The notes: generated by a model not told the origin, from the letters alone. 64,000 nt of DNA from Haliotis cracherodii (GCF_022045235.1 NW_027266297.1:53258001-53322000), one strand, 5' to 3'. Counted from the stretch's first letter, positions 699 to 61,159 are shown. Made by a program: numbers and translations.

Positions 699-2030
699 GT
701 GCTTCCAAGATACACAATCCCCACTGTGCGAGGTGGCATAGTGGTCAATGTGTGGAATGTTACTACGGGTGGTTTGGACCTCAGTGTGAGAGAAAGTGTG
801 ACAGGAACTGCTGGACCACTGGGTGTTATAAGGGTACAGGGATCTGTGAACAATGTGTGCCGGGTAGATACGGAAGACATTGTAAAACAAGATGTCCTGA
901 CAACTGTAGATCGGGTAGAGACGGGACTGTGAACTGTGATCGGGTCGGCGGGAGATGCCAGGAGGGGTGTAAGGAAGATTGGTGGGGAGACACGTGTAGC
1001 AAGCGATGTAATAGTAACTGTAAGAGGGGGGCATGTATCCAGCAATCAGGACATTGTATCGGTGACTGCACACATGGCTGGCACGGATTGCACTGTGACA
1101 AACAGTGTTCAGTTGGGTGTCGTGGAAACCGCTGCAGTTGTGTGACAGGGGTATGTACGCATGGGTGTGGGAAAGGCTGGTCAGGTGAAACATGTGAAGA
1201 GCAAGAACAGCGAAGAGAATGTAGTGCCACGTGTAAAACGCATGAGTGTGATACGAATGGGAGGTGTTTGAAAGGATGTATACATGGATTCAGAGGCAGC
1301 TCCTGTAACGAAACATGTCCGGTGAATTGCCACATTTGTCAACAAGACACAACGTCATGCACGAGATGCGAACACGGATGGCAGGGACCTATCTGTACCA
1401 GCAGAACTATCACACATCATCATCATCGTCCGTCCAAAAAGGAACCGATATTCGACTCACTTGATTCCCCAGCTGTACCAAAAGGTATGTATATCACAAC
1501 CGATAGTGAAGCAGTCAGTCTAATCAAAATGAATGTTTCGGTCCAACTGCTTAACAAATGGATCCATCAAATCATTGTACTTTAATGGACCATCGGACAT
1601 TGAAGTAGTTTAGCTGAGGAATATATCCTGGTTAGTTGAATTCAATATATTGATGATGTATGTTCCTTTAACATAGAAATGAAAACCAAAGACGAAGAAT
1701 AATGCCTTTGCTTGTTAATGTTTTGGTATCATTCTCTTCCTTTCAGGTAGGGCGAACAGCAGGAATAATGGCAACGTGTTGCTGGTCCTGGTAGCTGTGA
1801 TTATCAGTGCAATGGGTCACATTGATCTGTCATGTTATGCCTATGAAACAGTCCGAATACAAGGAACCGTACGATACATCTTACAAAAGTTACGGCTACA
1901 CGTAAAACGGTTGTGTGTGCAGATTGCATGTCATGAGTGTACACTAGTTCATGCGTTTGTAAATTGGCGGTTCCAAAGGCCGTCAATATCAGATTGTATG
2001 TCCAGTGGTACGGTAATATTATCACCGTAG
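699..2030 (+). CDS. R1: multiple EGF-like-domain surface protein (MEGF10/SCARF-like), 5' partial
   Basis: EGF exon 699-1484 (ttacag|GT ... AAAG|gtatgt, phase 1-1, matches ORF 752-1585) with an HHHH stalk. Terminal exon from 1747 (tttcag|) reads GRANSRNNGNVLLVLVAVIISAMG and stays open to 2030. No signal exon was identified. Confidence 0.8.
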
Positions 2031-2619
2031 TTTTGTTCTCACGTGATGCTTCAATATAACCTGCATCGAATGCAATCTTTTATGCTAACTGAAAACATGA
2101 TTCAATTTCTATCGTTAGATTTCTTAACTATTTACAACCCAAACATCGAGTTGGTCTCACATTTAAGAATGTGTCAAGGGAAAGTAACTCCAACATACTT
2201 CACCGTCATAGTGACATTTGGTTTCATCATCTTTTACATTCTTCATACCATTACTTCGAGAACGTATCAACTCAAGCTCAAGTGTGTTGAGCATAGAATA
2301 GAAACACAGGAACTTATTGGCTATCAAAAGTGGTATTTCTTATGATGACAAATGTGCACCATTAACAAAGTAAAAATATTCATTTGTTTATTGTTTTCCT
2401 TAGAACTACGTGTGGGAGAATGAGGATTCGCCTGATTGGTCTCCTGATTTTGGCTACTGTTGTACAAAGAAATAATGTGCTGTCAAACTGTCTGTCTGTT
2501 TAATCCTGGACACTGAAAGTCCTGATGTATTTGATTTTAAATAAAAAAGCTATTTTTTAAAGCATGATGAGACCGAGTTTTTATGCTGTCATGGCTTGTA
2601 CATGTACAGGTTCGATTAC

Positions 2620-2822
2620 ATGTGTCTGTCATCGTGTGCAGAGTTGCGCCCCTTAGGTGGGCCAGAAATCTATGTCGTGGGTCTGAATTGCCCTTGTCAG
2701 CAACATGTTCGTGTTTGTGGGTTTCACCAACGTGGTAAATACCTAAAGCCTGCACCAAATGGAACTCGCCTGATATAACTGATATACTGTTCAAAGCGGA
2801 GTTAAAGTAAGACAACTCACTG
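2620..2822 (+). mobile_element. SINE family A, degenerate copy
   Basis: Matches 18645-18898 (tgtgcagagttgcgcccctt...gtggtaaa...ctgttcaaagcgg...caactcact). Confidence 0.65.
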
Positions 2823-3748: not shown

Positions 3749-4057
3749 TATATGTTGGTTGCTAACATGGGGATCATGGAGGCATATACAAATGTATGTA
3801 TATGTAACAAAAGAATTTGACTCTATGCCTGTCGGTACATGAACTCTTAAAACAGCGACACCTGATCTTCACCCAAAGTATAGGGGATGTTGGATATCAA
3901 TACACTTTATCAAGCTTTTAAGGAACTCAGAATAGCTTATAACATTATGTGAAACTACACAGTGTCATTACAAGGCTGTCTGCCATAAATATTAAATAAA
4001 CAAGAGTTATCATTGCCGTAGTGGGAAATCACTTACCTGCAAAAAAGATAATGCTTG

Positions 4058-7971: not shown

Positions 7972-10309
7972 ATGGATTTGACTTGGATATTGTTAATCTA
8001 TTCATCGCTTGATGTCGGAAGTTGGGGTACGTATACATATTACTAATATATATGTTATATATTCATTTGTCTAAATACATATTGTTCCTTTTAAATGCTA
8101 TGCATTCATATCAATAAATGACTTTCTCACAACCTGTTTACTTGGTACCAATTCACTTCCTGCATATGAAACAACATCATTCCTTGATTAAATCGTTTTT
8201 GTTTCAGGGGGCAATGATGTTTGCAAACATATTGAGGTGTGCTGTCTTAATAAAGACAAACAGTGTAAAAGGGAAGCGTCGTCAGATATTTGCAAAGTCG
8301 AATGCAGTAAATATCATGATTGTTCCACAAACGACGTTCGGCTTTCGAAAGAAGGGATTGCATGCAAAGCAAATTGTACAAATGACATTGGGGCATGCGA
8401 TGTCGAATGCATCCCTGGACATTACGGTACCAAATGTCAATTTGGATGTAATGGTAAATGTAGAATGCATAAGTGTTACAGAGATAATGGCTCGTGCGTT
8501 GACGGTTGTGAGGCAGGCCACTTTGGAGATAAATGTGAGTCGGCATGTAACAGTAATTGCAAGGACAAAAAATGTGACAGGAGTAACGGAAGCTGCATCA
8601 ATGGGTGTTCTCCTGGCTATTACGGTGAAGACTGTCTTAGTAAATGTGAAACATCATGCCGTTATCACGTTTGTATTGGGAAGACTGGCAACTGTCTTTT
8701 TGGATGCACTGAGGGTTTCTATGGGCTTCTGTGCAAAAAGACTTGCTCTGACGATTGCTTTCTATGCCATCCTGAATTTGGGGAATGCATCTTTGGTAGG
8801 TACATATTTGAAACATCTTTTGAAGTAAGAGCGAATTCAGAGCAATACGAGTATTGTGATACATAATCAATCAACATTACCATGTTATTTGGATAACAGA
8901 TTAAGAATACCTTTGTGGTTCAGACAATAGCTCATGGTAACCCTCTTGATTGTTCCAGATCATAGTCCTGAGCTCGAGCTCGAGGGTACTCCTTGCACCA
9001 CGAAGATACTCGTTGTCTTTTGGGGGTCAGCTGGAGTGCTCATCCTCCTTGCTGGAGCGGCAGTGTTGATGTGCAGGTAACTCAGATTATTGTTTAATGT
9101 TTATGTATATTCAAACGCCAGTGTACATGTTGCTGTACATATGTCAGATAAACATACATGAGGCCAATGGTCCAGATAATCAACCATTGTTTTAAAACTG
9201 TTGATAACAGTAATGTTCTATTTTTCAAAACCATTTTTTATCTTCTTTCATTTTCAATAACATGTCAAATATAAGCCCTGCTAACAAAATAAAATATCAA
9301 AATTTTAATCCGCTTTAAAATGATATAAAGCATGACTGTGGCATACCTTGTACACATAATTGTAATTATGGTGTGAAATTAGTCAGATCACCTTTTGACT
9401 GTTTATGACCTATCAGTGTAGTGATGAGTTGTAACTTGTTTCCTAGTCATGGCTTAGGATCATTCCTTTAGATCAACCATGATCAGCACCTTAGTCTTAT
9501 ATTAGTTAATTACCTTAGTTAATAAATCTAACAAATAGGCTGATAACCTGACGCGTTTATATAAATTTTGAAACTACGCGTTGTCAGTCTGTATTGGTAC
9601 AGTTAGGATAAAACAGCACAAAAAACGAATAATACATTTCGTGTTTATTCACCACAGGAGCCAAACTTGTAGTTTCATTCACAAGAAAAAGAAGAAAGGA
9701 TTAGACACGCTGTTCATAGATACTAGAGCTCCAATGGACTTACCCAGCGTGCCCAGTCAAGACACCAGATCAAGCCACTATGAGGAAATCATGTGTGGTG
9801 AAAAAGATCGTCACTTTCAGCATATTAGTAAAAGTACGGGTAGTATAAACCTGAGAACCTTAATCAACACCATGAAACATCCAAACCAATGCAACACCGC
9901 TAAACGTAAAAGAAACAGGGCAAACGTCGGGAGAAACGCAATGTCACTGGCGTCATCGGTGCACACAATAGACAATTTTCCAACGTGTTGGCTAGGATCG
10001 GCGACTGATTTTGATGAAATGTCGGAACATCCTGATAAGAAGGAAGCACCTCTGGTAAGACCCCTTCAAGCTTCCCAGAAGGAAGCCGTGCGTTTTTCAG
10101 ATGTCCCAAGGGATGAGGATGAAGCAGAAGATATGGATACATCCGTGAAGGAAAGAGAGGGAGAAACTAAGTCACAGGCTGACGATGTGCCAAGGGAAGA
10201 AGCTGGCAAGAGATCCTACATCTCCGCTGTTTTTAATGAAACGGATGAAGATACAATGATCGATGATTCATGTAAAGGAATATATCCGGGATTGAAAAAG
10301 GAAGACTAA
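7972..10309 (+). CDS. R2: type I EGF-repeat receptor with long Tyr-motif tail (470 aa)
   Basis: Exons 7972-8026 (MDLTWILLIYSSLDVGSWG), 8208-8795 (EGF array), 8959-9076 (TM PCTTKILVVFWGSAGVLILLAGAAVLMCR) and 9658-10309 (tail with SHYEEI, YISAV, YPGL). All junctions are GT-AG and the total is 1413 nt in frame. Confidence 0.9.
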
Positions 10310-12454: not shown

Positions 12455-12552
12455 TATGTTTGTGCACCCCTCTATACAGCTGTATGTTTGTGCACCCCTC
12501 TATACAGCTGTATGTTTGTGCACCCCTCTATACAGCTGTATGCGTGTACACC
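12455..12552. repeat. 28-bp tandem repeat running into an assembly gap
   Basis: Unit TGTATGTTTGTGCACCCCTCTATACAGC, about 3.5 copies before the N run. Confidence 0.85.
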
Positions 12553-12815
12553 NNNNNNNNNNNNNNNNNNNNNNNNNNNNNNNNNNNNNNNNNNNNNNNN
12601 NNNNNNNNNNNNNNNNNNNNNNNNNNNNNNNNNNNNNNNNNNNNNNNNNNNNNNNNNNNNNNNNNNNNNNNNNNNNNNNNNNNNNNNNNNNNNNNNNNNN
12701 NNNNNNNNNNNNNNNNNNNNNNNNNNNNNNNNNNNNNNNNNNNNNNNNNNNNNNNNNNNNNNNNNNNNNNNNNNNNNNNNNNNNNNNNNNNNNNNNNNNN
12801 NNNNNNNNNNNNNNN
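12553..12815. other. Assembly gap
   Basis: Run of N. Confidence 0.99.
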
Positions 12816-13829
12816 GTTGTCATAAACTTATGATATGTAAATCCCGTCATGCAGAGAACGAATAACCAGAAAACGTACATGTATAAACTTGTATTGGGCC
12901 CACAGTGCGTCGTTCTTTATTTCTCAATATTTGACCTCGGACGACTGGAGTCTGCAGTAGAAATCTGCGTAATTAGAACATTCACCTGCTCCCCTGTGTC
13001 AGTTCACGTCGACAAAAGAATCGTTTAACGGGAAAGTAATTTTAACAATTGTGATGACTATCTTTATGAAGGATCGTTTGGTGGGTATCTGTTGGAGATC
13101 AACACCATCAAGGGAATTTGTCAGTGTCCCCATGTCACTAAAGGTCTTTGTTTTAAAGCCTCATAGCGCGTCCACGACTTAGCATATCACTATTTCCTTA
13201 CATAACAGAGTGTCACGTATACGCAGCCTCTAGTTTCATAATACATGTATGTCATCACCGTGAACTCCCAACATGCGTGTAGAGGATCCATCAACTGCAT
13301 TGATCAGCATAGCGGAAATGAAACTTAATGAGTTTCTGAATAAAATAATCAATATACGGCAAATACTGACGACAGTAATGAAAAAAGATAGATTTCCTCG
13401 GATTTGGGATACTATAAGTCAAATCCTGTAGGCAAGTTATCGATCGCCTGGGTATGTATCAATTCATTACAGGTTCAGTCAAAGCTCTTAAATGAAATAA
13501 AATTCACCTTATACGTTTGAAATTAATCTTATCATATAACTTCTGACATTCCTTTTGAATACCACAAATTGTGGGAGCCTATTATAAACGATAATCATCT
13601 TAGTAGATGATACTTAATTAAAGCAGGGGTTATATAAACTGACCCGGAACTATTGTCAATTTATGAAAGCATTCTAAAACGCAATATCATCTACGTATAT
13701 GATACTTATGCCTACATGATACTTCCATGTACATATAGGATATTATTATCTACACAGAAGAAAGGATGATCAACCATCGAATTATAGACTTCGGTAACAA
13801 TATTTTCGCGAGTAATTGACTATAGTTCC

Positions 13830-13910
13830 GGGTCCTTGTTTTAGCCCCTCAATGCCGAGCGCCAGACCGGGTAACAATAAGTACCATCTTTTAACGTCTT
13901 TTGGTATGCC
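13830..13910 (-). mobile_element. SINE family D fragment (Meta/MESC-like central domain)
   Basis: Reverse complement matches 20010-20070 (aaaagatggtactt...ggcgctcggcatt.aggggcta.aacaagga). Confidence 0.7.
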
Positions 13911-13959
13911 GCGCATCGCAATGGAATGTCTATCTTACATTGGATTTTGTTATAGCCAT

Positions 13960-14106
13960 NNNNNNNNNNNNNNNNNNNNNNNNNNNNNNNNNNNNNNNNN
14001 NNNNNNNNNNNNNNNNNNNNNNNNNNNNNNNNNNNNNNNNNNNNNNNNNNNNNNNNNNNNNNNNNNNNNNNNNNNNNNNNNNNNNNNNNNNNNNNNNNNN
14101 NNNNNN
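13960..14106. other. Assembly gap
   Basis: Run of N. Confidence 0.99.
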
Positions 14107-14349
14107 GGATAGTAACAGTACATCTTTGTACGTCTTTTCGCATCTGCCGCTCTCCTGGCACATTCACTAGACCACGGGGGCGGTACTTTAAATCTTTGAA
14201 TGTTTTGTGAAATTTGAATTTGAACGATGCGAACACTCTAACATCAAGAATCCCGGTGCTTAGAAATCTAGCAATAAAACTTTGTGAACATGATAATAGT
14301 TATAAGAAGATCTCGATTTGTGGAAATTTGAATTCTAAATACTTATACT

Positions 14350-14475
14350 GAGTTGGGTTTAACGCCGCTTTCAACGGTGTTCCATTTATTTACGGCATGT
14401 CAGTTTAATGTAGGGGGAACGTCGGAAGTGCACAGCGAATTGCGGCGCATCAGACGACTAGGATAGACGTGCCCG
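14350..14475 (-). mobile_element. SINE family A, internally deleted
   Basis: Keeps the tail (gagttgggtttaacgccgc) and head (gcacagcgaat...agacgactagg) only. Confidence 0.6.
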
Positions 14476-14539
14476 TAAATACGTTTTATTAAAAGTGACT
14501 TACATTAAATTCATATGATCATAAACAAAATATTTATTT

Positions 14540-16273: not shown

Positions 16274-17765
16274 ATGGACCTAATTTGGATTATGTACGTC
16301 TGTCTAACTCTTGTTCTTGCTCAAGGTGACAAAGTGACCGGAATGAAAGGTACGTAAGCATTTAACGCATGTCACTATACTTCAAATACACTTAAAAATA
16401 TTCATGTCTGCACGATTTCCTTTCAATGCTTTGACGAAGACATACACCAGTCACATTTTAATATTGCTTTGGTGGGTTGGGACGTCCAAGTGCCTTTTAG
16501 ACAGAGGCGAACTTATTCGGGGTCCTCCCGTCCTCCATGCGGCGGACGTGGCCGAGCCAGCGAAGACGGCGCTAGTGAAAGGCGTTGAAAATATTTTCTT
16601 GTCTGGAGAAGAGGGTCCAAAACTCGCTGTCGTACAGCAATTCGCTGACGTCACACATTCTCTTCGTCAATTTTGTGAGGACGGAAGACGCTTTGCCGAC
16701 CCGCCTGTTGATCTGAGCATCCACGGGCAGATTGTGTGCGACGGGGGAGCCGAGGTAGGTGAACTTATATTCAGTTGTGCCTTGACATAAATGTTCTGGC
16801 TTGGTATATTTCAGAACCCGAACCCGAACGTTCTTGCACAGCAGAGATACTCGCTGCTTTTTTGGGGTCAGTTGGAATGTTCATTCTACTTGCAGGAGCT
16901 GCAGTGGTCATGTATAGGTAAGTCAGGCCAGTGCACATTAACACTGGATGAAGAGATATACTTAAATGATGTAATTCAATTTTAATATCAATCCCATGAC
17001 TACCTGCAGTAACGCTCCTTTGCATATCAATTATGATGAAATTAAATGTATGAATATATGACTGTACTTGCATGTGTCGAAGCATGTGTGTGTAGTTGTG
17101 TATGTGTGCGCGCGTATACGCTTTACTTATCTTCCAATTATGATAAACATTGTTGTTCCCACAGGAATCGACTACTTACTTCCTTTGGGAAAAGGAGAAA
17201 AAAGGGATTAGATACACTGTTCGACGACACTTCCTCTCCTATGCGACCTCCGTCAAGGGCCCATCGCGAATCCATGTTAAATGGCTATGCTGACGTAATG
17301 AGCATCGACACTGCCTGTCACTATCGTCGTGTCAGCAGAAGTCTTGGCAGTATCAATTTTAGAACGTTCAGAGCGAGCACCGTGAAGGGTTCTACTCTGT
17401 ACAATACTAAAAGAAGTAAAATGAGCACAAACGCCGCAGTGGACATTACCATATCAGTGGAGCCCCCACAATTTAAAATATACGATCAGCAATCGTATTG
17501 GTTGGGCACGGAGACGGACTTTGAAGACGTGTACAAAAGTTCCCCAAAGAAAAGGGCAACTCTTCGCAGATACTATGCAGGTCTTCGGGAGGAAGCCGCC
17601 ATGTACCCCGACACCCGTACAGATAAAGATGAAGAGGATACAGCATCGGAGGAACCACGGGGAGCCACTGGGACGCAGACACATTGTGCATCAAGGGATG
17701 TACGAAGCAAATTTCTTTACATCTCCCCTGTGTTTAACGAAAAAAAAGCAGAATCAAAGACATGA
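16274..17765 (+). CDS. R3: ectodomain-less transmembrane paralog of R2, putative signalling adaptor (259 aa)
   Basis: Exons 16274-16349 (MDLIWIMYVCLTLVLAQGDKVTGMK, donor gtacgt), 16815-16917 (EPEPERSCTAEILAAFLGSVGMFILLAGAAVVMYR) and 17165-17765 (tail homologous to R2: KKGLDTLFxDT, GSINxRT, WLGxxTDF, YISxVFNE). Total 780 nt with no stop or frameshift, and no EGF exon in intron 1. Confidence 0.85.
16460..16770 (-). mobile_element. RTE-clade LINE relic in intron 1 of R3
   Basis: Minus strand reads KFTYLGSPVAHNLPVDAQINRRVGKASSVLTKL and RLRWLGHVRRMEDGRTP, both RTE ORF2 signatures; internally deleted. Confidence 0.85.
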
Positions 17766-19635: not shown

Positions 19636-19645
19636 ATTGGACTCT

Positions 19646-23469: not shown

Positions 23470-25556
23470 ATGAGGGGTCAATGTTGCATTCACGTACTTG
23501 GTGTGGTAAGTTAGGTATTTGTTTCTAATCTATACGATAGATATACATGTAAGTTTGTTGTCTGTACGTGTTTTTTTATAATGCTGCACTCGGCAATATT
23601 CCAGTTTTGTGACGGCGGTCTAAATAGTCGAATCTGGATCAGACAATCCAGTAAGCATGAATCTACGCAATTAGCTAGGACACGATGATATTCATCAACC
23701 ATGTCACCGAGTCACCCGATGTTTACTGAGGCAACAATTAAGTGGAGGTCGGATGACAATCGCGCATGTTTGCTGTTGTTTTTTCACTCTCGCAATGTTT
23801 TACTCTGCCATTCATCATGCTCTTACGTTTTTACTACTTTTGATGAAACAAATTATAATATACCTGATATGATGGGTTTTGCAGAGTGTAATGGTGGGAC
23901 TGGGATCTCTGTTGATACAAGGAAGTGAGTATTACATACTTATTATTGTCACTCATTGTATTCATTACGATCATGAATCACTGTAAAGCTTTCATTAACA
24001 CTCCTATGTGTATCACTGCTATATGATATTCAAAGAGTTCATTAAAGCTCCTAAATAACGACTATTAATGTCATGAAAACTATGTATGTTTCATAAATAA
24101 GTAAATGCTGTCGTTACAGGTGAGGTCTGCAACGAGAGATGTTCCTATTGTGTGGGGACGAAGTGTCGGGAATGCCTCTACGGCTGGTATGGACGCGATT
24201 GTAATGTAAAATGTAGTGAGTTTTGCTGGCATGGTGGTTGTGAGAGGATAACAGGACGGTGTCACCAGTGTGTTCCTGGGAGACACTCAAGCTACTGCAC
24301 CAAACTCTGCCCACAACACTGCAGGGAGAATAGCAAGGGTCGGGTCAACTGTGACCTATCAACTGGAAACTGTTTGGAGGACTGCGTAGAAGGAAGATGG
24401 GGTCCACGATGCCAGCACAGATGTCACGCAAACTGTAAAGATGAACTTTGCTACAAAGAAGATGGAGGGTGTCTGAAAGGCTGCCTTGATGGACTGTATG
24501 GCGTCAAATGTAAAAAGCAATGTTCAGAAGGTTGTTTGAGCAGCACGTGTGAATGGTTGACTGGTAAATGTAACCAAGGATGTAAGGTTGGTTTCCTTGG
24601 CTCCACGTGTTCGTACCCCATGACTAGACACTGTCTTAACCAGGCTTACTATGCAGAGCATCATACCATGGCGTGTACCGATGGATGTGAAGATGGTTAC
24701 ACTTCAGCAAGTTGCAACGAAACATGTAATACCAGATGTCTAAAATGTCATCAGTATTCACAGACATGTCAGTTATGTATGTCTGGATTTTATGGAGACA
24801 AATGCCAACTCGAATGCCATACGAACTGTCAGGAATTGAACTGTGACATGTCTGGTCGATGTGACAGAGGGTGTAAACGAGGTTTCCGTGGTGGATATTG
24901 TAATGAAACCTGCCCCTACAACTGTTTGGCATGTAGTCAGCATTACAAGACTTGTACTGAGTGTAAAGTAGGGTATACTGGAGCTACGTGTACAGAGGTG
25001 GAGTCATACAACGAGTTAGACGTCACAGGTAATGATGCTACATATCTATTCTAAAATACATTGGTAACAAACCTTGGTGAATGACGGCAAAGCTAAATTT
25101 GATTGATAACAATATTGTTAACTGAAAGAAGCGGAATTAGCGTCGATGTGCACAGATGGTGTTAATACATTTGACGTGATACCGTTGACTACCACAATAA
25201 ATACGGATTAACGAATCTTTGTCTCAGAGTATATCCTCTGTATACATTTAGATTTCCCCAATAGAAGCGTGTCTGGACAATCGGGGTCCGGCATAATGAG
25301 GTTTACTGTGTAATGCTCTTTCTTAACAGTTTAGTATTACTATGTAACCCATTAAATGTTCAAGAGTAGTTACATGTTCTTGATAGTTCTTAGATTATAT
25401 AAAAATCAAATATAGCTATGCTCAACACTTATAACGTTTGTTTAAGTCAAAGTGTCTTGCCTTGTTTCAGATACGGTGTCACACAGCAAGGCCTGCATCT
25501 GGTTAACACTAATAATGTGCACTGTAACGTATCAGTTGTCCTCGTGCATAACGTGA
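23470..25556 (+). CDS. R4: EGF-repeat protein with GPI-signal-like C-terminus (356 aa)
   Basis: Exons 23470-23505 (MRGQCCIHVLGV), 23885-23924 (SVMVGLGSLLIQG), 24120-25028 (EGF array) and 25471-25556 (DTVSHSKACIWLTLIMCTVTYQLSSCIT*). Total 1071 nt in frame; AATAAA near 25788. Confidence 0.88.
23560..23720 (-). mobile_element. SINE-like family C, degenerate, in an R4 intron
   Basis: gcactcggcaatattccag...ggcggtct...tctggatcagacaatccag. Confidence 0.7.
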
Positions 25557-40192: not shown

Positions 40193-42332
40193 ATGTCGTG
40201 GTGTTGCGCCGTGTTGGTGGTGTTGGCTGCCGTTGTTGGTAAGTAGTTACATGTTGTTGTATACAGTGAAAAAATATATATCAGTCGATGCTTATCAGAA
40301 CACGTTATTGTCCAAGACGAATCACAAATTCAAAGTCATGTCTGACTTAATTATTGTATGTGGACTGACTGTGTCTACTCGTTCATTTCAAATGTTATCA
40401 GCCCCTGTTTCTCCACTGTTAAGGAAGGAACGTATATTGTATGTAGCAATAGTTTACACGTCGTTTTAGGTTAAGATGATTCAAGAATTTTATGAGGTGA
40501 TCGATGAGATAGCTCAGTATGCATGTGAACACATGTAACTGGTATCAGAGATATATGGAATACGTCTGTTAATATGATTTTTAAAAGGAATTATCTCTTT
40601 TTCAGAGACGTCTCAATACGGCAGTCACTGCTTAAGATCAAGCGAACCCAAGCCGTGTATGTACTGTGTGAGGGGGTGGTTTGGCGAGGACTGTAGCCGA
40701 AATTGTCCATCATGTGATAATTCTGGTTGTGACAGAAATACAGGCATATGCGTCAACTGTGCAGATGGGTTATACTCAGAAAGCTGTTCCTTGAAATGCC
40801 CAGATCACTGCAAGACGAGAAATGACAGCCAGGTTCGCTGTGAAAGGATTACAGGACATTGTATGGAAGACTGTAAATCTGGATGGTGGGGAGACAAGTG
40901 CAACAAGCGTTGTAGTGACAACTGTCTCCGTTCAGACTGTTTCTTCTATGATGGTTCGTGCGCTTGGGGCTGCAAGGATGGTTGGACGGGAAGCATGTGC
41001 ACTGACAACTGTCCAGAAGAATGCGCCTTGAACAAATGCTCCCAACGTGGAAAATGTACTATTGGGTGTAAGAAAGGTTTCTATGGAGAAACATGTGAAA
41101 ATAAATGCAGTGACACGTGTAGGAATAACAACTGCTACTTTGACAACATCATCCATTACACGGTATGCCGAGATGGGTGTAGCGATGGATGGAAGGCTGC
41201 TTACTGTAATGAATCTTGTTCTACCGGTTGTAGAAAATGTAATCAACATAATGGTGAATGTTCCAAATGCATGGTTGGTCGCTGGGGTGTACAGTGTGAG
41301 AAACGCTGTTCAACCTGCAGCAACTCACTCTGTGATGTCACTGGGGAGTGCACAGAAGGCTGTCAGAGTGGTTATCATGGACACATGTGTGACCGAGTAT
41401 GTCAACCCGACTGCCTTGAGTGTCGCAAAAACGATAGCGAGTGCCTCGTATACAAACCTGGGAAGACGGATGAAAGTATTGACACTATTCTGGAAGATCT
41501 GGGTGATGGTGAAAACCCCAACGATAGAGGTATGCAGGTACAGCCACAGAATAGCGATACATTGATCCAATTAACTGACATCTCCCCAATCCAGGACAAG
41601 TAAAACATTCCAGATAACATTCTATTAGTTTTGTTTGAATTTTCTTCTGTCAAAGATACGTTATGTCTTTATTTGTGAGTTGAAAAATATAGAACAAATA
41701 TAGACCTATTATGATATAATACTCGACAAGTATCATTCCCCTCCATCTTACATATATCTATGCCACATAAAATGTATTTATTTGTTTGGTCTCTGGAGCA
41801 TGCATAATGACAGAACGTGTATAGGCATTTTAACCTGTATATACTTATGTACGTGCATATCTTTCAGGCGACGCTCACGTCCTAAGGATAGCAATACCGG
41901 TCTCCGTCGCAGTGGCATTTGTTGTCTTCATTATTGTATTGATTGCCATCTGCAGGTAATACTATAAAGAATTATTTCCATTGTGAACTTTCACCATTCT
42001 TGTCAAGGGAAAAGTGTATAGTGTTTCGTACTGACGATCTTTAATGTGTTAATCTGTAGCCAGCGACGAAAGCAGGGTAGATGATGTGTATTAAAGTAAA
42101 ATCAAATTTAAAGAATCATGTGTGGTTTCGGGGATAATTCATGAATCTATTAAGTGTGGGTGTACATGATGTCTTATGTGCTACAATATGTTGCAGGTGG
42201 AGAAAACTACATAAACGTGGACATGTTGAGGAACAGCGTGTTACAGAGACACCCTCGGACTCTGAGACAGAGTCGTTTGTTACCCCCGAGACACAAGTCA
42301 AACGAAAGGCAACATCCCTGGAGATGTTGTAG
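40193..42332 (+). CDS. R7: type I EGF-repeat receptor with short Tyr-free tail (397 aa)
   Basis: Exons 40193-40238 (MSWCCAVLVVLAAVV), 40606-41529 (EGF array), 41868-41955 (GDAHVLRIAIPVSVAVAFVVFIIVLIAICR) and 42197-42332 (WRKLHKRG...KATSLEML*). Total 1194 nt. Confidence 0.9.
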
Positions 42333-46844: not shown

Positions 46845-48916
46845 TTACTGTTTTAAATTCAAACTGAAAACAACTACTGTAACCACAACCAGTGTCTCAT
46901 CCCCAGGCCTGTATGATCCACCTGCAGGAGAATATTTGTATTGCATTAATGCATTTGTATGTACATGAATATGTTTATGATGATGTGCCGAAGTACAAAC
47001 ACACTGTCTTTTTAAAACAAAAACTGATTCAATTGATGGAAAGCACTACATATATGGCAATGCATGTATCCACTGTTATATTGTGTTACATGACTTTCAT
47101 GAAAAATGTGAATGAAAACTAACTTCATAGAATGTTTAAAAAATAACCAACGTTGACTTTATTATGCAAAGAGGTTTTAGACTGAATGTGCTAGTTGCTT
47201 ACTTGTATTTACGTCGTCCTCATCTGGACACTCCCGGGAGTCATGTGTGATGGGCAGACATGTGACGTCGCATTTATCTTTACATCGACATGGCTCATGC
47301 GTCTCAAGGCATCCGTCACAAGCAGTGCCACAACGGTTCTCACAGTTGTCTCCATGGTAACCGAGTTGGCAACTCCTGCATCTTCCATCTCTGTCACATG
47401 TCTTGTTAAAACACGTGGCACTACATGTTCTAGTGCAGTCACTTCCCCAGTAGCCTTGCTTGCATCTGGAACATTCCCCAGTCTCTTGAGAACATGCCTC
47501 ACAGTTACCAGGACACTTCAGCTTACAGTCGAGTGACATCCAGCCGTCCACACAGCCCTGTCTGCAGACCGTAGACTTCATACTGTGGTCATAGAAACAA
47601 TCCTGATCTCTACAGTGTCTGTTACACTGCTTATTGCAGTGATGCCCGTGAACACCGTGTTTACATCCTTGTGTACACTTATGGCTCCCGTACTGTTCGC
47701 ATGTGTCACCGTGACATCCCCCTGGACACCTGGTGTCACAACTGTCACCGGCCCAACCGTTCCTGCAGCCTCTAGCACACGACCCGTCCCAGAAGTAGCA
47801 GGAGTTGTCTTCACATCCACCACTGCACTTGTTTTCACACTTCTTTCCCCACCAACCGCCTTGACAGTTTTCCAGACAGTTTCCTGTCTCCCGGTTACAG
47901 TAGGGCTTGTCACCGTGACTGTATCTACAGTTGGGAGGACATGTCTCTGTACAGTTGGTGGCATGGTACCCAGCCCCACACTGTATACACCTCCCTGTGT
48001 CACTGTCACAGCCGCCGACGTCGCAGAAGCCGAAACATTTGTAGTTGCAACTGTCACCATGCCAGCCTCTCTTGCAGTCAGTGCAACGACCGTCGTCTGA
48101 TGGCCAGAGACAGTTGGAATCAGCTGACGATTGATGCATAAAGAATACTGAAACAGATATACTAGTCTTGACTTTGGTTAGACGCATGAATTATATAATT
48201 TCAAAGTGGCCTTCGGGTGATCAAAAGATAACATTGGAGGCAATGGAGGCAATCAAATCGGGGTTAATGAACACATGCACGTGTACATTTCAGGTAGCGT
48301 TTTGTCAGAAAGGGTTCTGATAAACAACGAAGCAGGGTTCCGTTCCACAAAGCTACCGTAGCGCTAAGGTGATCGTAACTCCCATACATTAACATAGAAT
48401 TACGACTTTCATTGTGCTACGATCGCTTTGTGGAACGGTTTCTCAAATTTCGATGCATTGTATACTCGTATCATCATTTGGTTGACACATCACGAACACA
48501 CGTATTGTTTATACACGTGCATAAGTACACACTTATAACCAAATAAATTATTCGTGCTTGTGTTCAGGCAAACCAACTACAGAATAATTTCGTTAAATCG
48601 AATATGTTACAATAATTGGAACATAGTATTAGAATTAAATTCCATAGATATACACATGACAAATATCCAAATGTAGTTTTTCAAATAATTTTCATGGCGA
48701 CTCATTGTAGATATACTGCGCTCAGTGAGTACACTGTAGCCGTTCGTACTTCAAGCCAGGGTCGCCTGACAGTAATCATCCAGACAAGAAAGGCGGACAA
48801 TGTATCAATCATTTCAAACTTCATGGAAACGTTCTTGTTCTTGTTTTAACCAGTATCCAACCGGACAGTGTCTTGGACTTACACACTAACAACAGCGGGC
48901 TTCTAGTCATATCCAT
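46845..48916 (-). CDS. R8: EGF-repeat protein with GPI-signal-like C-terminus (351 aa)
   Basis: Exons 48916-48883 and 48147-47203 give MDMTRSPLLLVLFFMHQSSA|DSNCLWP plus the EGF array; exon 46921-46845 reads SGSYRPGDETLVVVTVVVFSLNLKQ*. Total 1056 nt. Confidence 0.88.
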
Positions 48917-56431: not shown

Positions 56432-59400
56432 TTGTTTATACCACCGATGCTCACACGATGTATGGTAGCAAAAAAAGACGTGATACTTCAAACAACTGAA
56501 ACCGGGCGGCAAGACATTTCAATTAACATACTAGATTACATTTATTGTAAAAAGGAAGTATTTAGGTGATATTCACAAATTCAATAAGTGACACAGATAC
56601 ATTTGTGTAATTCCATATACCAGTAGTTGCCAGTAAGACCAAGTTGGTTTCTTGTGATGTAGATATAGAATAATTATCCCTCGTGATCAGAAATTTAACT
56701 GCATTGTTTCTAAACTGAGGAATTGAGGTATTCATCTGAAATATATTTATATGTACATTTGATGTGTTTTTTTGTCATGTGTATGAACTGCTATGTAGAA
56801 CATATTCATCCAGTACAAGTTAACGTAACAGTTACCAAAGCTAATGGTGCTGGCATGTTAACACTGTTATAGTACAGGATAATGAATTTAGTTGATGCAC
56901 TGTTTCGTATCAAGGCATCAGCAACATTTAACACGAACATTTACTTATTGCAAATGCAGTTTCAACTGTAATGTATCGTTGTTCCTACTGGGAGATATTT
57001 CCACTCTGTTATGCATTACGTATTACGGCGTGTCGGCTCACATGAATATTCTTAGCGGAAACAAAACCTTTTGATATCAGTTCGTTCCTTCATTTTCGCA
57101 AGTCCTAAAACAGTATTTGCTACGAGAACAGAGTTAAATCTGAATAATCAATCAAACACAGCTCCAGTCAGGTTAAACATATCCACATGATCATTTAAGA
57201 GACATGACTTCAATGTAACATTAGAGCAGTACGCTCTACAGTAAATTATATCTTACTCCGGACATATATGCATTCACATATGCCACAGTATTATTCAAAA
57301 CCGATATAGACATGTTTTATGTAATAGCCGTCATTTAGCCACTGGTTAGTCAAGTGACAATATCTTATTATTTCAGAGGACCCGAGCGCGTATGTTGCCT
57401 AAGAATTTAATCCACACTGACAGAGCCTGAAGGACAATCTGATATGGTTTTTTTACAATTATGGATGCAAATATGCAGATTTTAAATACGAGTCAACTCA
57501 CGGTCTACTAGAAATGCAGATGTGATATGGAAATGTATAGTTCATCACACATATCATGTCATGCATCCTAATACACGTTAGTCAGGTCTGGAGTCTTGAT
57601 ATGACTTGGATGAGTCATGGCTCAATATTTATGACGTATCCCGCTTGCAATTACTCGCCGTCAAGCAACACCAATATATAGGATCAACCCAGGTTCACAG
57701 CAAAGGTTGCCTCGAGTGACAAGTGAGGATATGTTCAAAGCTCCAGTAAGTCCAAGGGAGGTTACTCATTTTAGGATCCTTCTATACTTGTATATGAGAT
57801 ATGTGTGTATTGTGAGTACACTTTTTATTTTGATGATGTGTCACTTTGTTCTTGATGTAGATTTACTCGCTGAACTTAAAGCACAAGCGTGTAATTCAAC
57901 ACCAATTCAAGGATGAAACACAAAAGGGCATCCCAAGAAACCTCCTCCAAACGTATGTCAGTGACAGTAATCGTTTCAGAGCGTAGGATTGCGGTTCAAT
58001 ACATGTGCATCCAACAACGCAGTACATATATCATATGTTTGTAGATAATATCTGAAGAACCGTGATGTGATGAGTGAAAAGTCAACCGAGAGTCATTTAA
58101 TGGCAATAACGGACATGTAGAAGCGCTTTCCGTGACAATGTGACATGAACATGCACTTGAAGGGGTTGAATATAAAATGTTGTGTGTATTAGATTACTGT
58201 AGATAACACACATCTTGTATCTTTGAGGTGGACATATTCATCGGTTGTCAACTTAAAGTAGGAGGAAAGCCCAAAGTGAACGTATCTGGCACTTTGGCGA
58301 AAGCAACAAGGACGTGCTCAAACAAGGAATCATAATAATAGTGAACATCTGAACCATGGATCTCGACCTTGCACGGCGAAGGGACGCAACACGTCACATC
58401 TTAGATGGCTTGTACAGCCCGCTCTTTTTTCTGTCTAGTTCAGTCATCTATCTGATTAACTTAATGGTGAAGCATTTGCAGCTACATAAGAGACAGATCA
58501 GAAATAATAGCTGAGATATTTTCGGGATTATTTTATATATTGTCTGCACAAGTACTGTCCTATCGGTAAAATGTGTGCAAGTCGTGACCACGTATGAGAA
58601 CATAGATAGAATTGCTGCCGTGTCGAAGATGAACCAAACAAGTAGCACAAACAAACTCTCTGAATCATTGTTCATGCCGGATGCATTGATGCATGCTATG
58701 TGTATGCATTGACCACCTGTGCAAGTGGTACATCAGCACAGTAGCATGCACACTATCTGACACTCTTTTATTGACTTTGGTTTATGGACACGTTCAGTAA
58801 AAGATATTGTACGAGTGACAGTACTTTACCCCAAAAGTCCTCTAACTGACTTCGAGGACAGCTATTTAGTCCACGAATAGCACATACGTGTATAAGGGAA
58901 CGGTTCGCGCAAACCACCACTCACGGCCCACGAAGCCACGGTCCCTGTGTCTGTGTGAATCTCCGTGTAAATGCAGTTTGAGTGAGTATAAAGTGTATTG
59001 GTTTGAGTACATCATTAGGGTACTGTTACTGCACGTTACTGCACCAGAGGCTCCTCTAGTTATCCTCTAGTTAAGAGAACAATACGCGGAATGCAGTTGT
59101 AGATTTCAGTGAGAGTACTGCACACGTTATCTGTGACGTCACACTATTGGTTGTTATGCTCGTCGCTAAAAATAGTTGACGTGCTCCAGATGTGACCTTA
59201 ATGTTAAACTGACTCACTCACTTTTCATTTGTTTGTATTACAGCACAACAAACTACGTCAAAACTCTTTATTCAAGACAATAAATAATGTCAATGAAAAT
59301 AATAATGGCAGTGGCTGTCAATGATACTTGTACATGAAAAACGCATTTATCTGGGAAATGTTTGAGCAGTCTCATATTGTTAATTATATCACTATGTATA

Positions 59401-59578
59401 GGCAACTTTGCAGGGAATATACACTACATTTAATTTCTTTATGAGATTCAGTAAGGTAACACACCTGATAAAAACAGCAGTCCTTTCCTACACGACAACA
59501 ACAATAACATATAAGTGTTTACGTGACGATGAATGTTTACATCATATTTTGTCTTATGTCCATCATGGGTTATTCTGG

Positions 59579-61159
59579 TTACAAATATGAATATCTCAAC
59601 ATGTAAGTTAACAAAACCACTAGGTTCAGGTAGGTCGATAAGTTGGATGTGTACCAGCTCGAGCCATTCCTCGAAGTGATTTCGTGGATGTTGTCACCTG
59701 AAAGTATATTTGTCCTACATCAGTACAAGTGTCACACACGATATAATTTACCCCAGGACTCTCTTTGTACGTGGACAGAGAGATGTGGAACACACACGAC
59801 GTACATCAGAATGCAGGGATAACATCAAATGATGATAACTGAAACGAGAGGGAAACTCAAACATTTTTTCTCAAATGTTGATCAAAGTGAACATAAAATC
59901 AATACCATATTCATTTCGCCATGATGTGAATCACATTTCGGGCTAATACAAAACATTTTAGTAATGTATTCTATCGCCGTGACGAGTGAATATGTCTGGC
60001 TCTTGAATCCCATTTGACCACGTTTTTCAACTTATTGGACACAAGAAATACGAAAAGGTCCAAATGCCTACCTGTGTGTCTTTTGTTCTCTTTTACATGG
60101 AGACATGTCAAGTCGGGTAGCATGTGATGCAGGCAGGACGAAGTGCACGTCTCTCCACATCTATAACCTCCCTTTGCCTCCAGGCATATGATACAGTCAG
60201 CATCACAGTATGTCCTACACGTGTCCCCGTGGTAACCGAGTTGACAACTACTGCATCGACCATCTCGATCACATGTCTGGTTAAAACACGTGGCACTACA
60301 TGGTCTAGTGCAGTCAGTTCCCCAGTAGCCTTGTGTGCATCTGGAACATTCCCCAGTCTCTTGAGAACATGCCTCACAGTTACCAGAACACTTCAGCTTA
60401 CAGTCGAGGGACATCCAGCCATCTACACAGCCCTGTCTGCAGACTGTAGAGTTCATTCTGTGGTCATAGAAACAATCCTGATCTCTACAGTGTCTATTAC
60501 ACTTCTTATTACAGTGACGCCCGTGAACACCGTGTTTACAACCTCGGGTACACGTATGGCTCCCGTTCTGTTCACATGTGTCACCGTGACATCCCCCTGG
60601 ACACCTAGTGTCACAACTGTCACCGGCCCAACCGTTCCTGCAGCCTCTAGCACACGACCCGTCATAGAAGTAGCAGGAGTTGTCTTGACATCTGTCACTG
60701 CACTTCCTCTCACACCAGTCTCCCCACCAGCCGCCTTTACAGTTTTGCAAGCACACCCCACTTTCACGGTCACAATACACCTTACCATCATCATTCTTTC
60801 TGCAGTTGGGAGGACATGTAACGTTACAGTTGTGAGAAAAGTAGCCTGCCCGGCACTGTTTACATATCCCAGTGTCCCTGACACAGACGCCGCTATCACA
60901 GAAGGAACAGTTAAAGTTACAGTCACCACCATACCATCCTCTCTCGCAGGCAGGGCAGGGGTCTGATGCAGATGGCCAGAGACAATGACGCGAGTGAGGT
61001 GCTCCGATAATACACGAAACTGCAAAAGTGTTCACAACATGTATTAATAAATACTCAGTGTTAGTGAAAAGCAATTTACTCACATAAAGCAGATTAACTT
61101 TACTTACCAGAACATAGCAACTGTACTAGTAGAACTGTTCTTGACATATTTGTATCCAT
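59579..61159 (-). CDS. R10: EGF-repeat protein with GPI-signal-like C-terminus, paralog of R8 (372 aa)
   Basis: Exons 61159-61108 (MDTNMSRTVLLVQLLCS), 61019-60072 (EGF array) and 59697-59579 (GDNIHEITSRNGSSWYTSNLSTYLNLVVLLTYMLRYSYL*). Total 1119 nt. Confidence 0.88.

What the first reader, a model, noticed from the sequence alone, without database searches (positions are those of the whole stretch)
699..61159. Candidate invertebrate paired immune-receptor complex built on EGF repeats
Seen: ten clustered paralogs share one ectodomain family but differ in output module. R2 (SHYEEI) and R6 (STYESL) have long tails with SxYxxI/L ITIM-like motifs; R7 has a short Tyr-free tail with a TM-proximal Arg; R4, R5, R8 and R10 have tail-less hydrophobic ends; R3 has a tail but no ectodomain; R9 and 410-580 are dead copies. 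Known: vertebrate paired-receptor clusters (LILR/KIR, Ly49, CD300, Fc-gamma receptors) have this mix of inhibitory, adaptor-dependent activating and GPI/decoy forms, with birth-and-death turnover; CED-1/Draper/MEGF10 and SCARF1 are EGF-repeat phagocytic receptors. Inference: this is a convergent EGF-based recognition locus (pathogen, apoptotic-cell or allorecognition) in a mollusc-like animal.
Basis: partly seen in the sequence, partly recalled or inferred. Interest (0 to 1): 0.92.

Follow-up and report, generated by a model that had tools for sequence, protein, structure and literature searches.

The report
Abalone SCARF1/MEGF10-like EGF receptor gene array
This is a slice of a large tandem array of scavenger-receptor-like EGF-repeat genes in the black abalone, already annotated in RefSeq; the members do differ in their membrane and tail parts, but the features that would make it a vertebrate-style paired inhibitory/activating immune receptor locus were tested and mostly not met.

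Summary
The window is Haliotis cracherodii C34:53,258,001-53,322,000. Two RefSeq proteins match its exons at 100%.

Confirmed:
- Eight intact single-exon EGF arrays: R1, R2, R4-R8, R10.
- An ectodomain-less gene, R3.
- One EGF fragment at 458-571.
- R9 was not found.

Output modules do differ:
- R2 and R6 have a TM segment plus long Tyr-bearing tails.
- R7 has a 44-aa Tyr-free tail.
- R4, R5, R8 and R10 end in short hydrophobic peptides. Only R5 is supported by an orthologue; the other three are splice inferences.
- R3 lacks EGF in H. asinina too. The assembly gaps lie outside every gene model.

The paired-receptor reading fails its key tests:
- Members with different outputs share only 30-47% ectodomain identity. 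The close pairs (R4/R5, R8/R10) share the same output.
- R7's Arg flanks the hydrophobic core instead of sitting in it. Long-tailed relatives carry K or Q at that position.
- The ITIM-like pattern arises by chance in 9-16% of shuffled tails. YxxΦ motifs are common family-wide.
- One-to-one orthologues exist across Haliotis.

The closest known protein is SCARF1. The family has more than 100 copies genome-wide, and the local array holds about 20 EGF exons over roughly 200 kb.

No RNA evidence could be obtained. The scan's first readers flagged similar EGF clusters elsewhere in this genome (s1-829719, s1-836061, s1-829686); none has been checked.

The parts
458..571 (+).
   Evidence: Profile HMM of alignment A2 against the six-frame translation, E 1e-6. 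Reading frames are broken.
674..1484 (+). R1 EGF-array exon (upstream limit approximate; phase-1 donor GT at 1485). A hydrophobic exon candidate follows from 1747.
   Evidence: Nearest paralogue is at C34:53237148, 67% identical, with a homologous hydrophobic exon.
7972..10309 (+). R2 gene: SP 7972-8029, EGF 8208-8795, TM 8959-9076, tail 9658-10309. The tail is 216 aa and carries SHYEEI.
   Evidence: Exon-by-exon match to H. rufescens P0019, 'PEAR1-like', 468 aa. Splice sites read.
12553..14106 (.). Two assembly gaps (12553-12815 and 13960-14106) in the R2-R3 intergenic space. They are not part of any gene model.
16274..17765 (+). R3, the ectodomain-less paralogue of R2: SP-like exon 16274-16325, stalk+TM exon 16815-16917 (…RSCTAE + 22 hydrophobic residues), tail 17165-17765 (YADV-x8-YRRV).
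   Evidence: Phase-1 and phase-2 junctions read. Tail is 33% identical to R2's. H. asinina XP_067678730.1 (P0038, 251 aa) has TM plus tail and no EGF.
24113..25556 (+). R4: EGF exon about 24113-25028 plus an inferred terminal exon 25471-25556 ending in a short hydrophobic peptide.
   Evidence: The terminal exon is inferred from splice phase only.
29850..31160 (+). R5: EGF exon about 29850-30768 plus terminal exon 31084-31160 (…DEGVHKQASILAVVFLYSVARIITT*).
   Evidence: 76% identical to H. rubra P0001, a 366-aa model with the same kind of C-terminus.
33555..36287 (+). R6: SP 33555-33609, EGF to 34695, TM 35183-35297, Ser/Thr/Pro-rich tail 35834-36287 (YSVI, STYESL, PYITP).
   Evidence: H. asinina P0006 ('SCARF1-like', 514 aa) keeps all three tail motifs: YSVI, STYESL, PYITP. 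See also P0009 and P0039.
40193..42332 (+). R7: exons 40193-40238, 40606-41529, 41868-41955 and 42197-42332. It is 397 aa with a 44-aa acidic Ser/Thr tail and no Tyr.
   Evidence: The exons reproduce RefSeq XP_071117989.1 (P0015) exactly. Against H. asinina P0016: ectodomain 81%, TM 52%, tail 82%.
46845..48190 (-). R8: EGF exon (stop-free 48190-47203; phase-1 donor) plus inferred terminal exon 46921-46845 (SGSYRPGDE + LVVVTVVVFSL…*).
   Evidence: No orthologue model was retrieved.
59268..61159 (-). R10: SP candidate 61159-61108, EGF exon about 60995-60072, inferred terminal exon 59350-59268.
   Evidence: 73% identical to R8 in the EGF exon, with no homology outside it.

Best explanation
WHAT IT IS
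The stretch is the central 60 kb of a roughly 200-kb tandem array in the black abalone genome. The array holds about 20 EGF-array exons at C34:53.129-53.330 Mb. The genes are class-F-scavenger-receptor-like (SCARF1/MEGF10-like).

Each gene is assembled from a few exons:
- a signal peptide exon;
- one large symmetric phase-1 exon carrying the whole array of five to six six-Cys EGF-like units;
- a stalk+TM exon;
- a tail exon.

Because the junctions are phase-compatible, whole modules have been lost or replaced during old duplications. The result is:
- single-pass receptors with long Tyr-bearing tails (R2, R6);
- a receptor with a short acidic Ser/Thr tail (R7);
- forms that end in a short hydrophobic peptide and are probably lipid-anchored or secreted (R4, R5, R8, R10);
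- one form that kept only signal peptide, stalk, TM and tail (R3).

HOW IT PROBABLY WORKS (INFERRED)
- The rod-like EGF arrays bind polyanionic or multivalent ligands or other cells, as SCARF1, MEGF10 and Draper do.
- The transmembrane forms internalise or signal through YxxΦ/SH2-type tyrosine motifs.
- The tail-less forms act as soluble or surface-tethered binders.

SHOWN VERSUS INFERRED
- Shown: the gene anatomy and the homology.
- Inferred: ligand, tissue and direction of signalling.
For: Species and annotation
- P0015 and P0009 (H. cracherodii RefSeq) match window exons at 100%.

Family size and distribution
- Genome-wide, 106 of 130 scored candidates match; the first look gave 1276 candidates. 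They lie in many tandem clusters.
- The array extends beyond the window, with 10 more EGF exons upstream and 2 downstream.

Closest known protein
- The profile's best solved relative is human SCARF1 8hna, E 2.3e-9.
- The AF2 model (pLDDT 79) has 8hna as its top Foldseek hit, E 1.9e-7.
- NCBI names the orthologues 'SCARF1-like', 'MEGF10' or 'PEAR1-like'.

Gene structure
- Exon phases were read directly from the sequence.
- Orthologue models support R2, R3, R5, R6 and R7.

Tails
- YxxΦ motifs are common in the tails of other mollusc family members.
- R6's tail is 24% Ser/Thr and 16% Pro, which to my knowledge resembles SCARF1's tail.

Literature
- MEGF-domain paralogue clusters and haemocyte expression are reported in Biomphalaria (PMC12297450).
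- The Nimrod cluster in Drosophila holds 10 EGF-repeat genes (PMC6852320).
Against:
- The C-termini of R4, R8, R10 and R1 therefore rest on splice logic only.
- Pfam gives only sub-threshold EGF_TEN hits on the ectodomains and nothing on the tails.
- Ligand-binding and scavenger function are inferred from distant homologues, about 20-25% identical in fold alignments.
- R3's conserved ectodomain-less form, with Cys-x-x-Glu at the membrane and a YxxV-x8-YxxV/I motif, is not explained by a simple scavenger model.
Confidence: 0.7

Rival explanations
1. The cluster is a convergent paired immune-receptor complex. R2 and R6 are ITIM-bearing inhibitory receptors. R7 is an adaptor-dependent activating receptor that couples through a charged membrane residue. 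R3 is a DAP12/FcRγ-like ITAM adaptor. R4, R5, R8 and R10 are GPI-linked decoys.
For: - Output modules really do differ.
- SHYEEI and STYESL fit [SIVL]xYxx[IVL], and STYESL is kept in H. asinina.
- R3 has a signal peptide, a stalk of roughly 10 residues with a Cys, Glu at the membrane entry where R2 has Lys, and YADV-x8-YRRV, which appears as YAEV-x8-YRRI in H. asinina.
- R8 and R5 end in ω-like small residues, a spacer and a short hydrophobic stretch.
- Draper shows that an EGF-repeat receptor can carry either ITAM or ITIM isoforms (PMC4503800).
Against: - Ectodomains of members with different outputs are only 30-47% identical. The nearest paralogues genome-wide are 47% for R7, 44% for R6 and 48% for R2.
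- All subgroups above 60% identity share one output type.
- The Arg, Lys and Glu flank an uncharged 22-residue core. The same position is K in long-tailed P0014 and Q in P0010.
- R7's TM is its least conserved part, 52%, against 82% for the tail.
- The ITIM pattern arises in 9% of shuffled T2 tails and 16% of shuffled T6 tails.
- A close R3 relative (P0037) reads YADG at the first motif.
- One-to-one orthologues exist across Haliotis.
Confidence: 0.1
2. The architecture is the same, but the role is not immune. The array would encode cell-adhesion, developmental, neural or shell-matrix/mantle EGF proteins, and the tyrosine motifs would serve only as endocytic sorting signals.
For: - One-to-one orthologues are stable across Haliotis, and ectodomain and tail are conserved about equally: 71 vs 69% for R6 and 81 vs 82% for R7. 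This shows no sign of fast ectodomain diversification.
- The family is enormous and dispersed.
- Abalone papers mention MEGF in muscle-growth contexts (titles only, not read).
- To my knowledge, YxxΦ is the generic AP-2 sorting signal.
Against: - Relatives in snails and oysters are expressed in haemocytes, respond to infection, or lie in a schistosome-resistance locus (PMC12297450, PMC9892467).
- SCARF1, MEGF10, Draper and Nimrod are phagocytic or scavenger receptors.
Confidence: 0.15
3. The apparent diversity of outputs is partly a gene-model artefact. The symmetric phase-1 EGF exons would be spliced across gene borders, so the tail-less members borrow a neighbour's TM and tail.
For: - RefSeq XP_046327755.2 of H. 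rufescens (P0039, 891 aa) joins R6 and R7 into one model.
- XP_071118432.1 (P0009) reads part of R6's EGF exon out of frame.
- All EGF exons have phase-1 borders.
Against: - The P0039 fusion places an EGF array after a TM segment and a cytoplasmic tail, which is topologically implausible.
- R7 alone is modelled separately in two species (P0015, P0016).
- R5's short terminal exon is modelled in H. rubra (P0001).
- R8 and R10 lie on the opposite strand from R2-R7.
Confidence: 0.05

Closest known systems
SCARF1/SREC-I (class F scavenger receptor) and its relatives SCARF2, MEGF10/11 and PEAR1
   Same: - Signal peptide, then nothing but an array of six-Cys EGF-like units, one TM segment and a disordered tail.
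- SCARF1 is the best sequence-profile match and the best fold match among solved structures.
- R6's tail is Ser/Thr/Pro-rich.
- NCBI already names the orthologues this way.
   Different: - Only distant similarity, about 21% identity in the fold alignment.
- Tails are unrelated and unique to each gene.
- Many members lack a TM segment and tail.
- The family is expanded to more than 100 copies, against two SCARF genes in mammals.
- Ligand binding is untested.
CED-1 / Draper / MEGF10 engulfment receptors
   Same: - An EGF-repeat ectodomain, a single TM segment and tyrosine motifs in the tail.
- Draper isoforms carry ITAM or ITIM (PMC4503800). An EGF receptor with either signalling polarity therefore already has an invertebrate precedent.
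   Different: - No EMI domain.
- No NPxY in any tail examined here.
- Output diversity here comes from gene duplication and exon loss, not from alternative splicing of one gene.
Drosophila Nimrod gene cluster (NimA, NimB1-5, NimC1-4)
   Same: - A chromosomal cluster of about ten EGF-repeat genes encoding haemocyte phagocytosis receptors (PMC6852320).
- To my knowledge, the NimB members are secreted and the NimA and NimC members are transmembrane. That mix of anchored and non-anchored forms is what is seen here.
   Different: - The NIM repeat signature (CxPxCxxxCxNGxC) is absent from all eight arrays.
- The expansion here is independent and molluscan.
Biomphalaria sudanica SudRes1 MEGF-domain gene cluster
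   Same: - A gastropod locus where 10 of 23 genes are paralogous MEGF-domain genes with different intracellular parts.
- It is associated with parasite resistance, and MEGF proteins are reported in haemocytes (PMC12297450).
   Different: - SudRes1 members include galactose-binding domains and tandem PTP domains.
- The window's genes have neither. Similar lectin/PTP forms were noted by first readers elsewhere in this genome (s1-829686, s1-836061; unchecked).
Vertebrate paired receptors with ITAM adaptors (KIR, LILR, Ly49, CD300; DAP12, FcRγ)
   Same: - A clustered family with long-tail, short-tail, tail-less and (R3) ectodomain-less members.
- R3's short Cys-bearing stalk, acidic residue at the membrane entry and dual YxxV/I motif resemble an adaptor.
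   Different: - No near-identical ectodomain pairs.
- The charges are not inside the membrane core.
- The motifs are degenerate.
- Orthology is stable.
- No functional evidence exists.

Membership tests
Class F scavenger receptors (SCARF1/2-like) | Ectodomain consisting only of tandem EGF/EGF-like six-Cys units after a signal peptide | tested here: met
   Each array has 4-5 CxxG[WYFH]xGxxC units and 35-55 Cys. Pfam finds no other domain. Best PDB profile hit is SCARF1 8hna, E 2.3e-9. Top Foldseek hit is 8hna, E 1.9e-7.
Class F scavenger receptors (SCARF1/2-like) | Single transmembrane helix followed by a long Ser/Pro-rich cytoplasmic tail | tested here: inconclusive
   Met for R6 (150-aa tail, 24% S+T, 16% P). 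R2 has a long tail that is not Pro-rich. R7's tail is 44 aa. R4, R5, R8 and R10 have no TM helix or tail.
Class F scavenger receptors (SCARF1/2-like) | Binding of modified LDL, polyanionic ligands or apoptotic cells | not testable with these tools
   Needs recombinant ectodomains.
CED-1/Draper/MEGF10 | N-terminal EMI domain before the EGF repeats | tested here: not met
   No EMI hit in Pfam at E 0.01. In R2, R6 and R7 the EGF exon follows the signal-peptide exon directly.
CED-1/Draper/MEGF10 | NPxY (CED-6/GULP site) plus YxxL/ITAM in the tail | tested here: not met
   No NPxY in the R2, R3, R6 or R7 tails or their orthologues. YxxΦ is present.
Nimrod family | NIM repeat signature CxPxCxxxCxNGxC | tested here: not met
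   Zero strict matches in all eight arrays. CxPxC occurs at most once per array.
Paired immune receptors (KIR/LILR/Ly49/CD300 type) | Inhibitory and activating members share closely similar ectodomains | tested here: not met
   Identity is 30-47% between members with different outputs. The 68% (R4/R5) and 73% (R8/R10) pairs share the same output. The nearest genome-wide paralogues of R7, R6 and R2 are 47, 44 and 48% identical. The extended array shows the same picture.
Paired immune receptors (KIR/LILR/Ly49/CD300 type) | Inhibitory member with a functional ITIM that recruits SHP-type phosphatases | tested here: inconclusive
   The pattern is present in R2 and R6 and kept in their orthologues. 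It arises by chance in 9-16% of shuffled tails, and the -2 residue is not conserved across paralogues. Binding cannot be tested here.
Paired immune receptors (KIR/LILR/Ly49/CD300 type) | Activating member with a short tail and a basic residue inside the membrane core | tested here: not met
   R7's Arg precedes the uncharged 22-residue core IAIPVSVAVAFVVFIIVLIAIC. The same position holds K or Q in long-tailed relatives. The TM is only 52% conserved against H. asinina.
Paired immune receptors (KIR/LILR/Ly49/CD300 type) | Birth-and-death turnover | tested here: inconclusive
   Fragments or pseudogenes exist at 458-571, C34:53243024 and C34:53329579. However, R2, R3, R5, R6 and R7 have one-to-one orthologues in other Haliotis species. 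No population data were available.
ITAM adaptors (DAP12/FcRγ/CD3ζ type), for R3 | Very short ectodomain with a Cys, an acidic residue in the TM, an ITAM in the tail, and association with receptors | tested here: inconclusive
   Present: a short stalk with Cys, a Glu three residues after it, and YADV-x8-YRRV. These are conserved as YAEV-x8-YRRI in H. asinina. Against: the Glu is at the edge of the core, the +3 residues are V rather than L/I, and P0037 reads YADG. Association was not tested.
GPI-anchored proteins, for R4/R5/R8/R10 | C-terminal ω site of small residues, a polar spacer and a terminal hydrophobic stretch, with no cytoplasmic tail | tested here: inconclusive
   By eye, R8 (SGS + YRPGDE + LVVVTVVVFSL) and R5 fit. 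R4 and R10 fit less well. No GPI predictor or transcript evidence was available.

The most novel reading that the evidence does not exclude
R3 would be a protostome counterpart of DAP12/FcRγ: an ITAM-like signalling adaptor. On this reading it arose when a SCARF-like receptor lost its EGF exon, and it has been kept since before the split of the H. cracherodii and H. asinina lineages. Its juxtamembrane Glu would pair with the Lys or Arg of R2 or R7, or it would serve the tail-less members. The array would then work as an adaptor-coupled recognition system that arose independently of the immunoglobulin and lectin-based systems of vertebrates.
Probability: 0.08. Interest if true: 0.85.

Novelty: new member of a known kind. 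Interest (0 to 1): 0.38.

Why it matters
Molluscs rely on innate recognition, and black abalone is an endangered species devastated by withering syndrome. A catalogued, well-modelled array of scavenger-receptor-like genes is therefore a useful candidate list for haemocyte recognition studies.

The general lesson is structural. Putting a whole ectodomain on one symmetric exon lets a receptor family shed or swap its anchoring and signalling modules.

The conserved ectodomain-less R3 is the one element that could turn an ordinary expansion into something new, if it proves to be an adaptor. As it stands, the locus is an ordinary member of a known, very large molluscan family, not a demonstrated paired-receptor system.

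Tried and rejected
RNA and genomic context

R9
- Nothing was found between R8 and R10. I tried tblastn to E 10, a Cys-density scan and a profile HMM.
- The Cys-rich ORF 55225-55575(-) has no Pfam hit.

Tails
- Pfam finds nothing on T2, T3 or T6.
- In the genome, the T2/T3 tail exists only in R2 and R3, and T6 only in R6.
- A profile search of 1.8 billion representatives found only three Haliotis proteins.

R8 and R10 flanks
- They share no homology outside the EGF exon, so R10's terminal exon could not be confirmed by comparison.

R3 'no ectodomain' as a gap artefact
- Rejected. The signal-peptide and TM exons are 490 bp apart with no N between them, and the H. asinina orthologue also lacks EGF.

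Complex prediction
- Not sent. The report does not claim that R3 binds R7 or R2, and the tool asks not to be used on neighbourhood alone.

Spliced models
All searches were exon by exon by reference.
- Exons of R7 were joined only inside a local script, to test equality with P0015.


Full report
**Origin of the window.** The window is G000:C34:53,258,001-53,322,000 of a 1.18-Gb, 80-contig assembly. Two RefSeq proteins of Haliotis cracherodii match window exons at 100%. They are XP_071117989.1 (P0015, 'scavenger receptor class F member 1-like') and XP_071118432.1 (P0009). Their source contig has the same length as C34, 73,386,740. The animal is therefore the black abalone, and the genes are already annotated.

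**Assembly gaps (tested first, as asked).** N runs lie at 12553-12815 and 13960-14106.
- They sit between the stop codon of R2 (10309) and the first exon of R3 (16274).
- A profile HMM of the EGF array finds nothing in 10400-16250.
- Gap 1 abuts a perfect 28-bp tandem repeat at 12455-12542, which probably caused it.
- No gene model of the finding crosses a gap, so continuity or frame across them does not affect any claim.
- An exon or gene hidden inside a gap cannot be excluded, because gap lengths are only estimates. I made no attempt to fill them.

**What is there.** Eight long stop-free, Cys-rich exons are mutually homologous.
- These are R1 674-1484, R2 8208-8795, R4 about 24113-25028 and R5 about 29850-30768.
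- They continue with R6 to 34695, R7 40606-41529, R8 48190-47203(-) and R10 about 60995-60072(-).
- A degenerate single EGF unit lies at 458-571 (HMM E 1e-6).
- R9 could not be found by tblastn to E 10, by a Cys-density scan or by HMM.
- Each array has 4-5 CxxG[WYFH]xGxxC units and 35-55 cysteines.

**Gene models with orthologue support.**
- R7: the four exons 40193-40238, 40606-41529, 41868-41955 and 42197-42332 reproduce P0015 exactly. I joined them only in a local script for that equality test.
- R2 (7972-8029, 8208-8795, 8959-9076, 9658-10309) follows H. rufescens P0019.
- R6 follows H. asinina P0006 and H. rufescens P0039.
- R5's last exon, 31084-31160, follows H. rubra P0001.
- The SP|EGF and EGF|TM junctions are phase 1 and the TM|tail junction is phase 2.

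**Gene models resting on splice logic only.**
- R8, R10, R4 and R1 all have good phase-1 donors after the array.
- Phase-compatible terminal exons ending in short hydrophobic peptides can be proposed: R8 46921-46845, R10 59350-59268 and R4 25471-25556.
- These are inferences. R8 and R10 share no homology outside the EGF exon.

**R3.**
- It has a signal-peptide-like exon (16274-16325) homologous to R2's.
- That exon is in frame with a stalk+TM exon (16815-16917) only 490 bp downstream, followed by a tail exon (17165-17765) 33% identical to R2's tail.
- There is no room and no gap for an EGF exon between them.
- A profile search of 1.8 billion representatives found only three relatives: R2's orthologue, a 197-aa Logan fragment (P0037) and H. 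asinina XP_067678730.1 (P0038, 251 aa). P0038 has TM plus tail and no EGF.
- The ectodomain-less state is therefore real and older than the split of these two Haliotis lineages. This agrees with s1-837999.

**Context.**
- The family is huge. One EGF exon used as query gives 1276 first-look candidates, and 106 of the 130 scored match at E ≤ 1e-10, in many tandem clusters on several contigs.
- The local array extends well beyond the window. Ten more EGF exons lie upstream from C34:53,128,877 and two downstream. These include a degenerate copy at 53,243,024 and a broken R8/R10-like fragment at 53,329,579.
- In a crude scan of eight of the ten upstream genes, only one (53,208,204, the orthologue of P0021) shows a clear TM plus long tail.
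- First readers of the scan flagged similar EGF clusters on other pieces of this genome (s1-829719, s1-836061, s1-829686). I did not check those.

**What family it is.**
- Pfam gives only sub-threshold EGF_TEN hits.
- A profile of five arrays finds human SCARF1 (8hna) as the best solved relative, E 2.3e-9, ahead of Tie2 and Notch ligands.
- An AlphaFold2 model of P0015 has mean pLDDT 79, with the EGF region mostly above 85. It shows a rod of small β-hairpin units and one TM helix.
- Its top Foldseek hit is again SCARF1, E 1.9e-7.
- The CED-1/Draper/MEGF10 definition is not met: there is no EMI domain and no NPxY.
- The NIM repeat signature is also absent.
- The genes are best filed as SCARF1-like members of the MEGF/SREC kind.

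**Testing the paired-receptor reading: ectodomain similarity.**
- Paired receptors are defined by closely similar ectodomains on opposite signalling modules.
- Here, members with different outputs are 30-47% identical. The only close pairs, R4/R5 (68%) and R8/R10 (73%), share the same output.
- Genome-wide, the nearest paralogues of R7, R6 and R2 are 47, 44 and 48% identical.
- In the extended array, every subgroup above 60% identity is uniform in output as far as a crude scan shows.

**Testing the paired-receptor reading: membrane charge.**
- R7's Arg lies immediately before an uncharged 22-residue core.
- The same position is Lys in R7 of H. asinina, Lys in long-tailed P0014 and in R2, and Gln in P0010.
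- R7's TM is its least conserved part, 52% against 81% for the ectodomain and 82% for the tail. That is not what intramembrane pairing would predict.

**Testing the paired-receptor reading: the tyrosine motifs.**
- The ITIM pattern occurs in 9% of shuffled T2 tails and 16% of shuffled T6 tails.
- YxxΦ and SxY[DE]x[LIV]-like motifs are common in the tails of other mollusc family members, while the -2 residue varies.
- To my own knowledge, YEEI is the classical Src-SH2 optimum and YxxΦ the AP-2 sorting signal. The sign of signalling therefore cannot be read from the sequence.

**Testing the paired-receptor reading: turnover.**
- R2, R3, R5, R6 and R7 have one-to-one orthologues in H. rufescens, H. 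asinina or H. rubra at 64-97% identity.
- Ectodomains are not less conserved than tails.
- This speaks against fast birth-and-death, although some fragments exist.

**What remains intriguing.** R3 combines four features:
- a signal peptide;
- a stalk of about 10 residues with a Cys;
- a Glu three residues after that Cys, where R2 has Lys;
- YADV-x8-YRRV, kept as YAEV-x8-YRRI in H. asinina.

This resembles an ITAM adaptor. Against it, the Glu is at the edge of the core and the +3 residues are Val. A close relative (P0037) also reads YADG at the first motif. I put the adaptor-coupled reading at about 8-10%.

**Literature.**
- A cluster of ten EGF-repeat genes encoding haemocyte receptors is known in Drosophila as the Nimrod cluster (PMC6852320).
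- Draper has ITAM and ITIM isoforms (PMC4503800).
- A gastropod locus rich in paralogous MEGF-domain genes with different intracellular parts is associated with schistosome resistance, and 29 MEGF proteins are reported in Biomphalaria haemocytes (PMC12297450).
- MEGF10-family transcripts respond in infected oysters (PMC9892467).
- The general idea of clustered EGF-repeat recognition genes in molluscs is therefore already published.

**Limits.**
- The RefSeq models are imperfect. P0009 reads part of R6's EGF exon out of frame, and P0039 fuses R6 and R7.

**Verdict.** The locus is a real, modular SCARF1/MEGF10-like receptor array. The paired-receptor interpretation is not supported by the features that could be tested. 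The locus is a new member of a known kind.

Noticed in passing
window 52647-53459 (-) and 20723-21589 (-): Two Tc1/mariner-type transposase remnants lie inside the array. One is a 270-aa ORF with HTH_Tnp_Tc3_2 and DDE_3 hits. The other is a copy split across frames.
   Followed up: partly
window 25834-27360 and 4047-5970: Two large minisatellites. One has a 23-bp unit in 66 copies at 97% match; it has strong GC skew and is open in three frames, which produces spurious 525-aa ORFs just downstream of R4. The other has a 37-bp unit in about 52 copies, between R1 and R2.
   Followed up: partly
window 33820-34416 / RefSeq XP_071118432.1 (P0009); H. rufescens XP_046327755.2 (P0039): Two public gene models look faulty. 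P0009 translates part of R6's EGF exon in the wrong frame, although the exon is open in its proper frame. P0039 fuses R6 and R7 into an 891-aa protein with two TM segments.
   Followed up: yes
window 46006-46374 (-); L010:1091-1567 (C34:53202091-53202567): A reverse-transcriptase ORF (RVT_1, E 3e-9) lies in the upstream part of the array. By eye, the Cys/His-rich ORF just downstream of that reverse-transcriptase ORF (from about C34:53202851) is also present as a remnant downstream of R8 in the window. The window copy has no Pfam hit.
   Followed up: partly
window 42197-42332 (R7 tail): The 44-aa Tyr-free tail is 82% identical between H. cracherodii and H. asinina, more conserved than the TM (52%). 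It contains an acidic Ser/Thr cluster (SDSETES) and ends in …SLEML. These may be trafficking or PDZ-type signals and were not examined further.
   Followed up: no
tails of R2, R3, R6 and Haliotis relatives P0010, P0014, P0021: A C-terminal Y-[IL]-[ST]-[PA] motif recurs near the end of otherwise unrelated tails: YISAV, YISPV, YITPV, YISPT, YLSPI, YLSPV. It may be a family-wide YxxP-type docking site.
   Followed up: no
C34:53243024-53243437 and C34:53329579-53330037 (outside the window): Two degenerate family copies flank the window. One is an R1-like exon with a Cys-to-Trp change and truncation. The other is an R8/R10-like fragment, 87-89% identical, with two stop codons in the wider genome-search match at this place.
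   Followed up: partly
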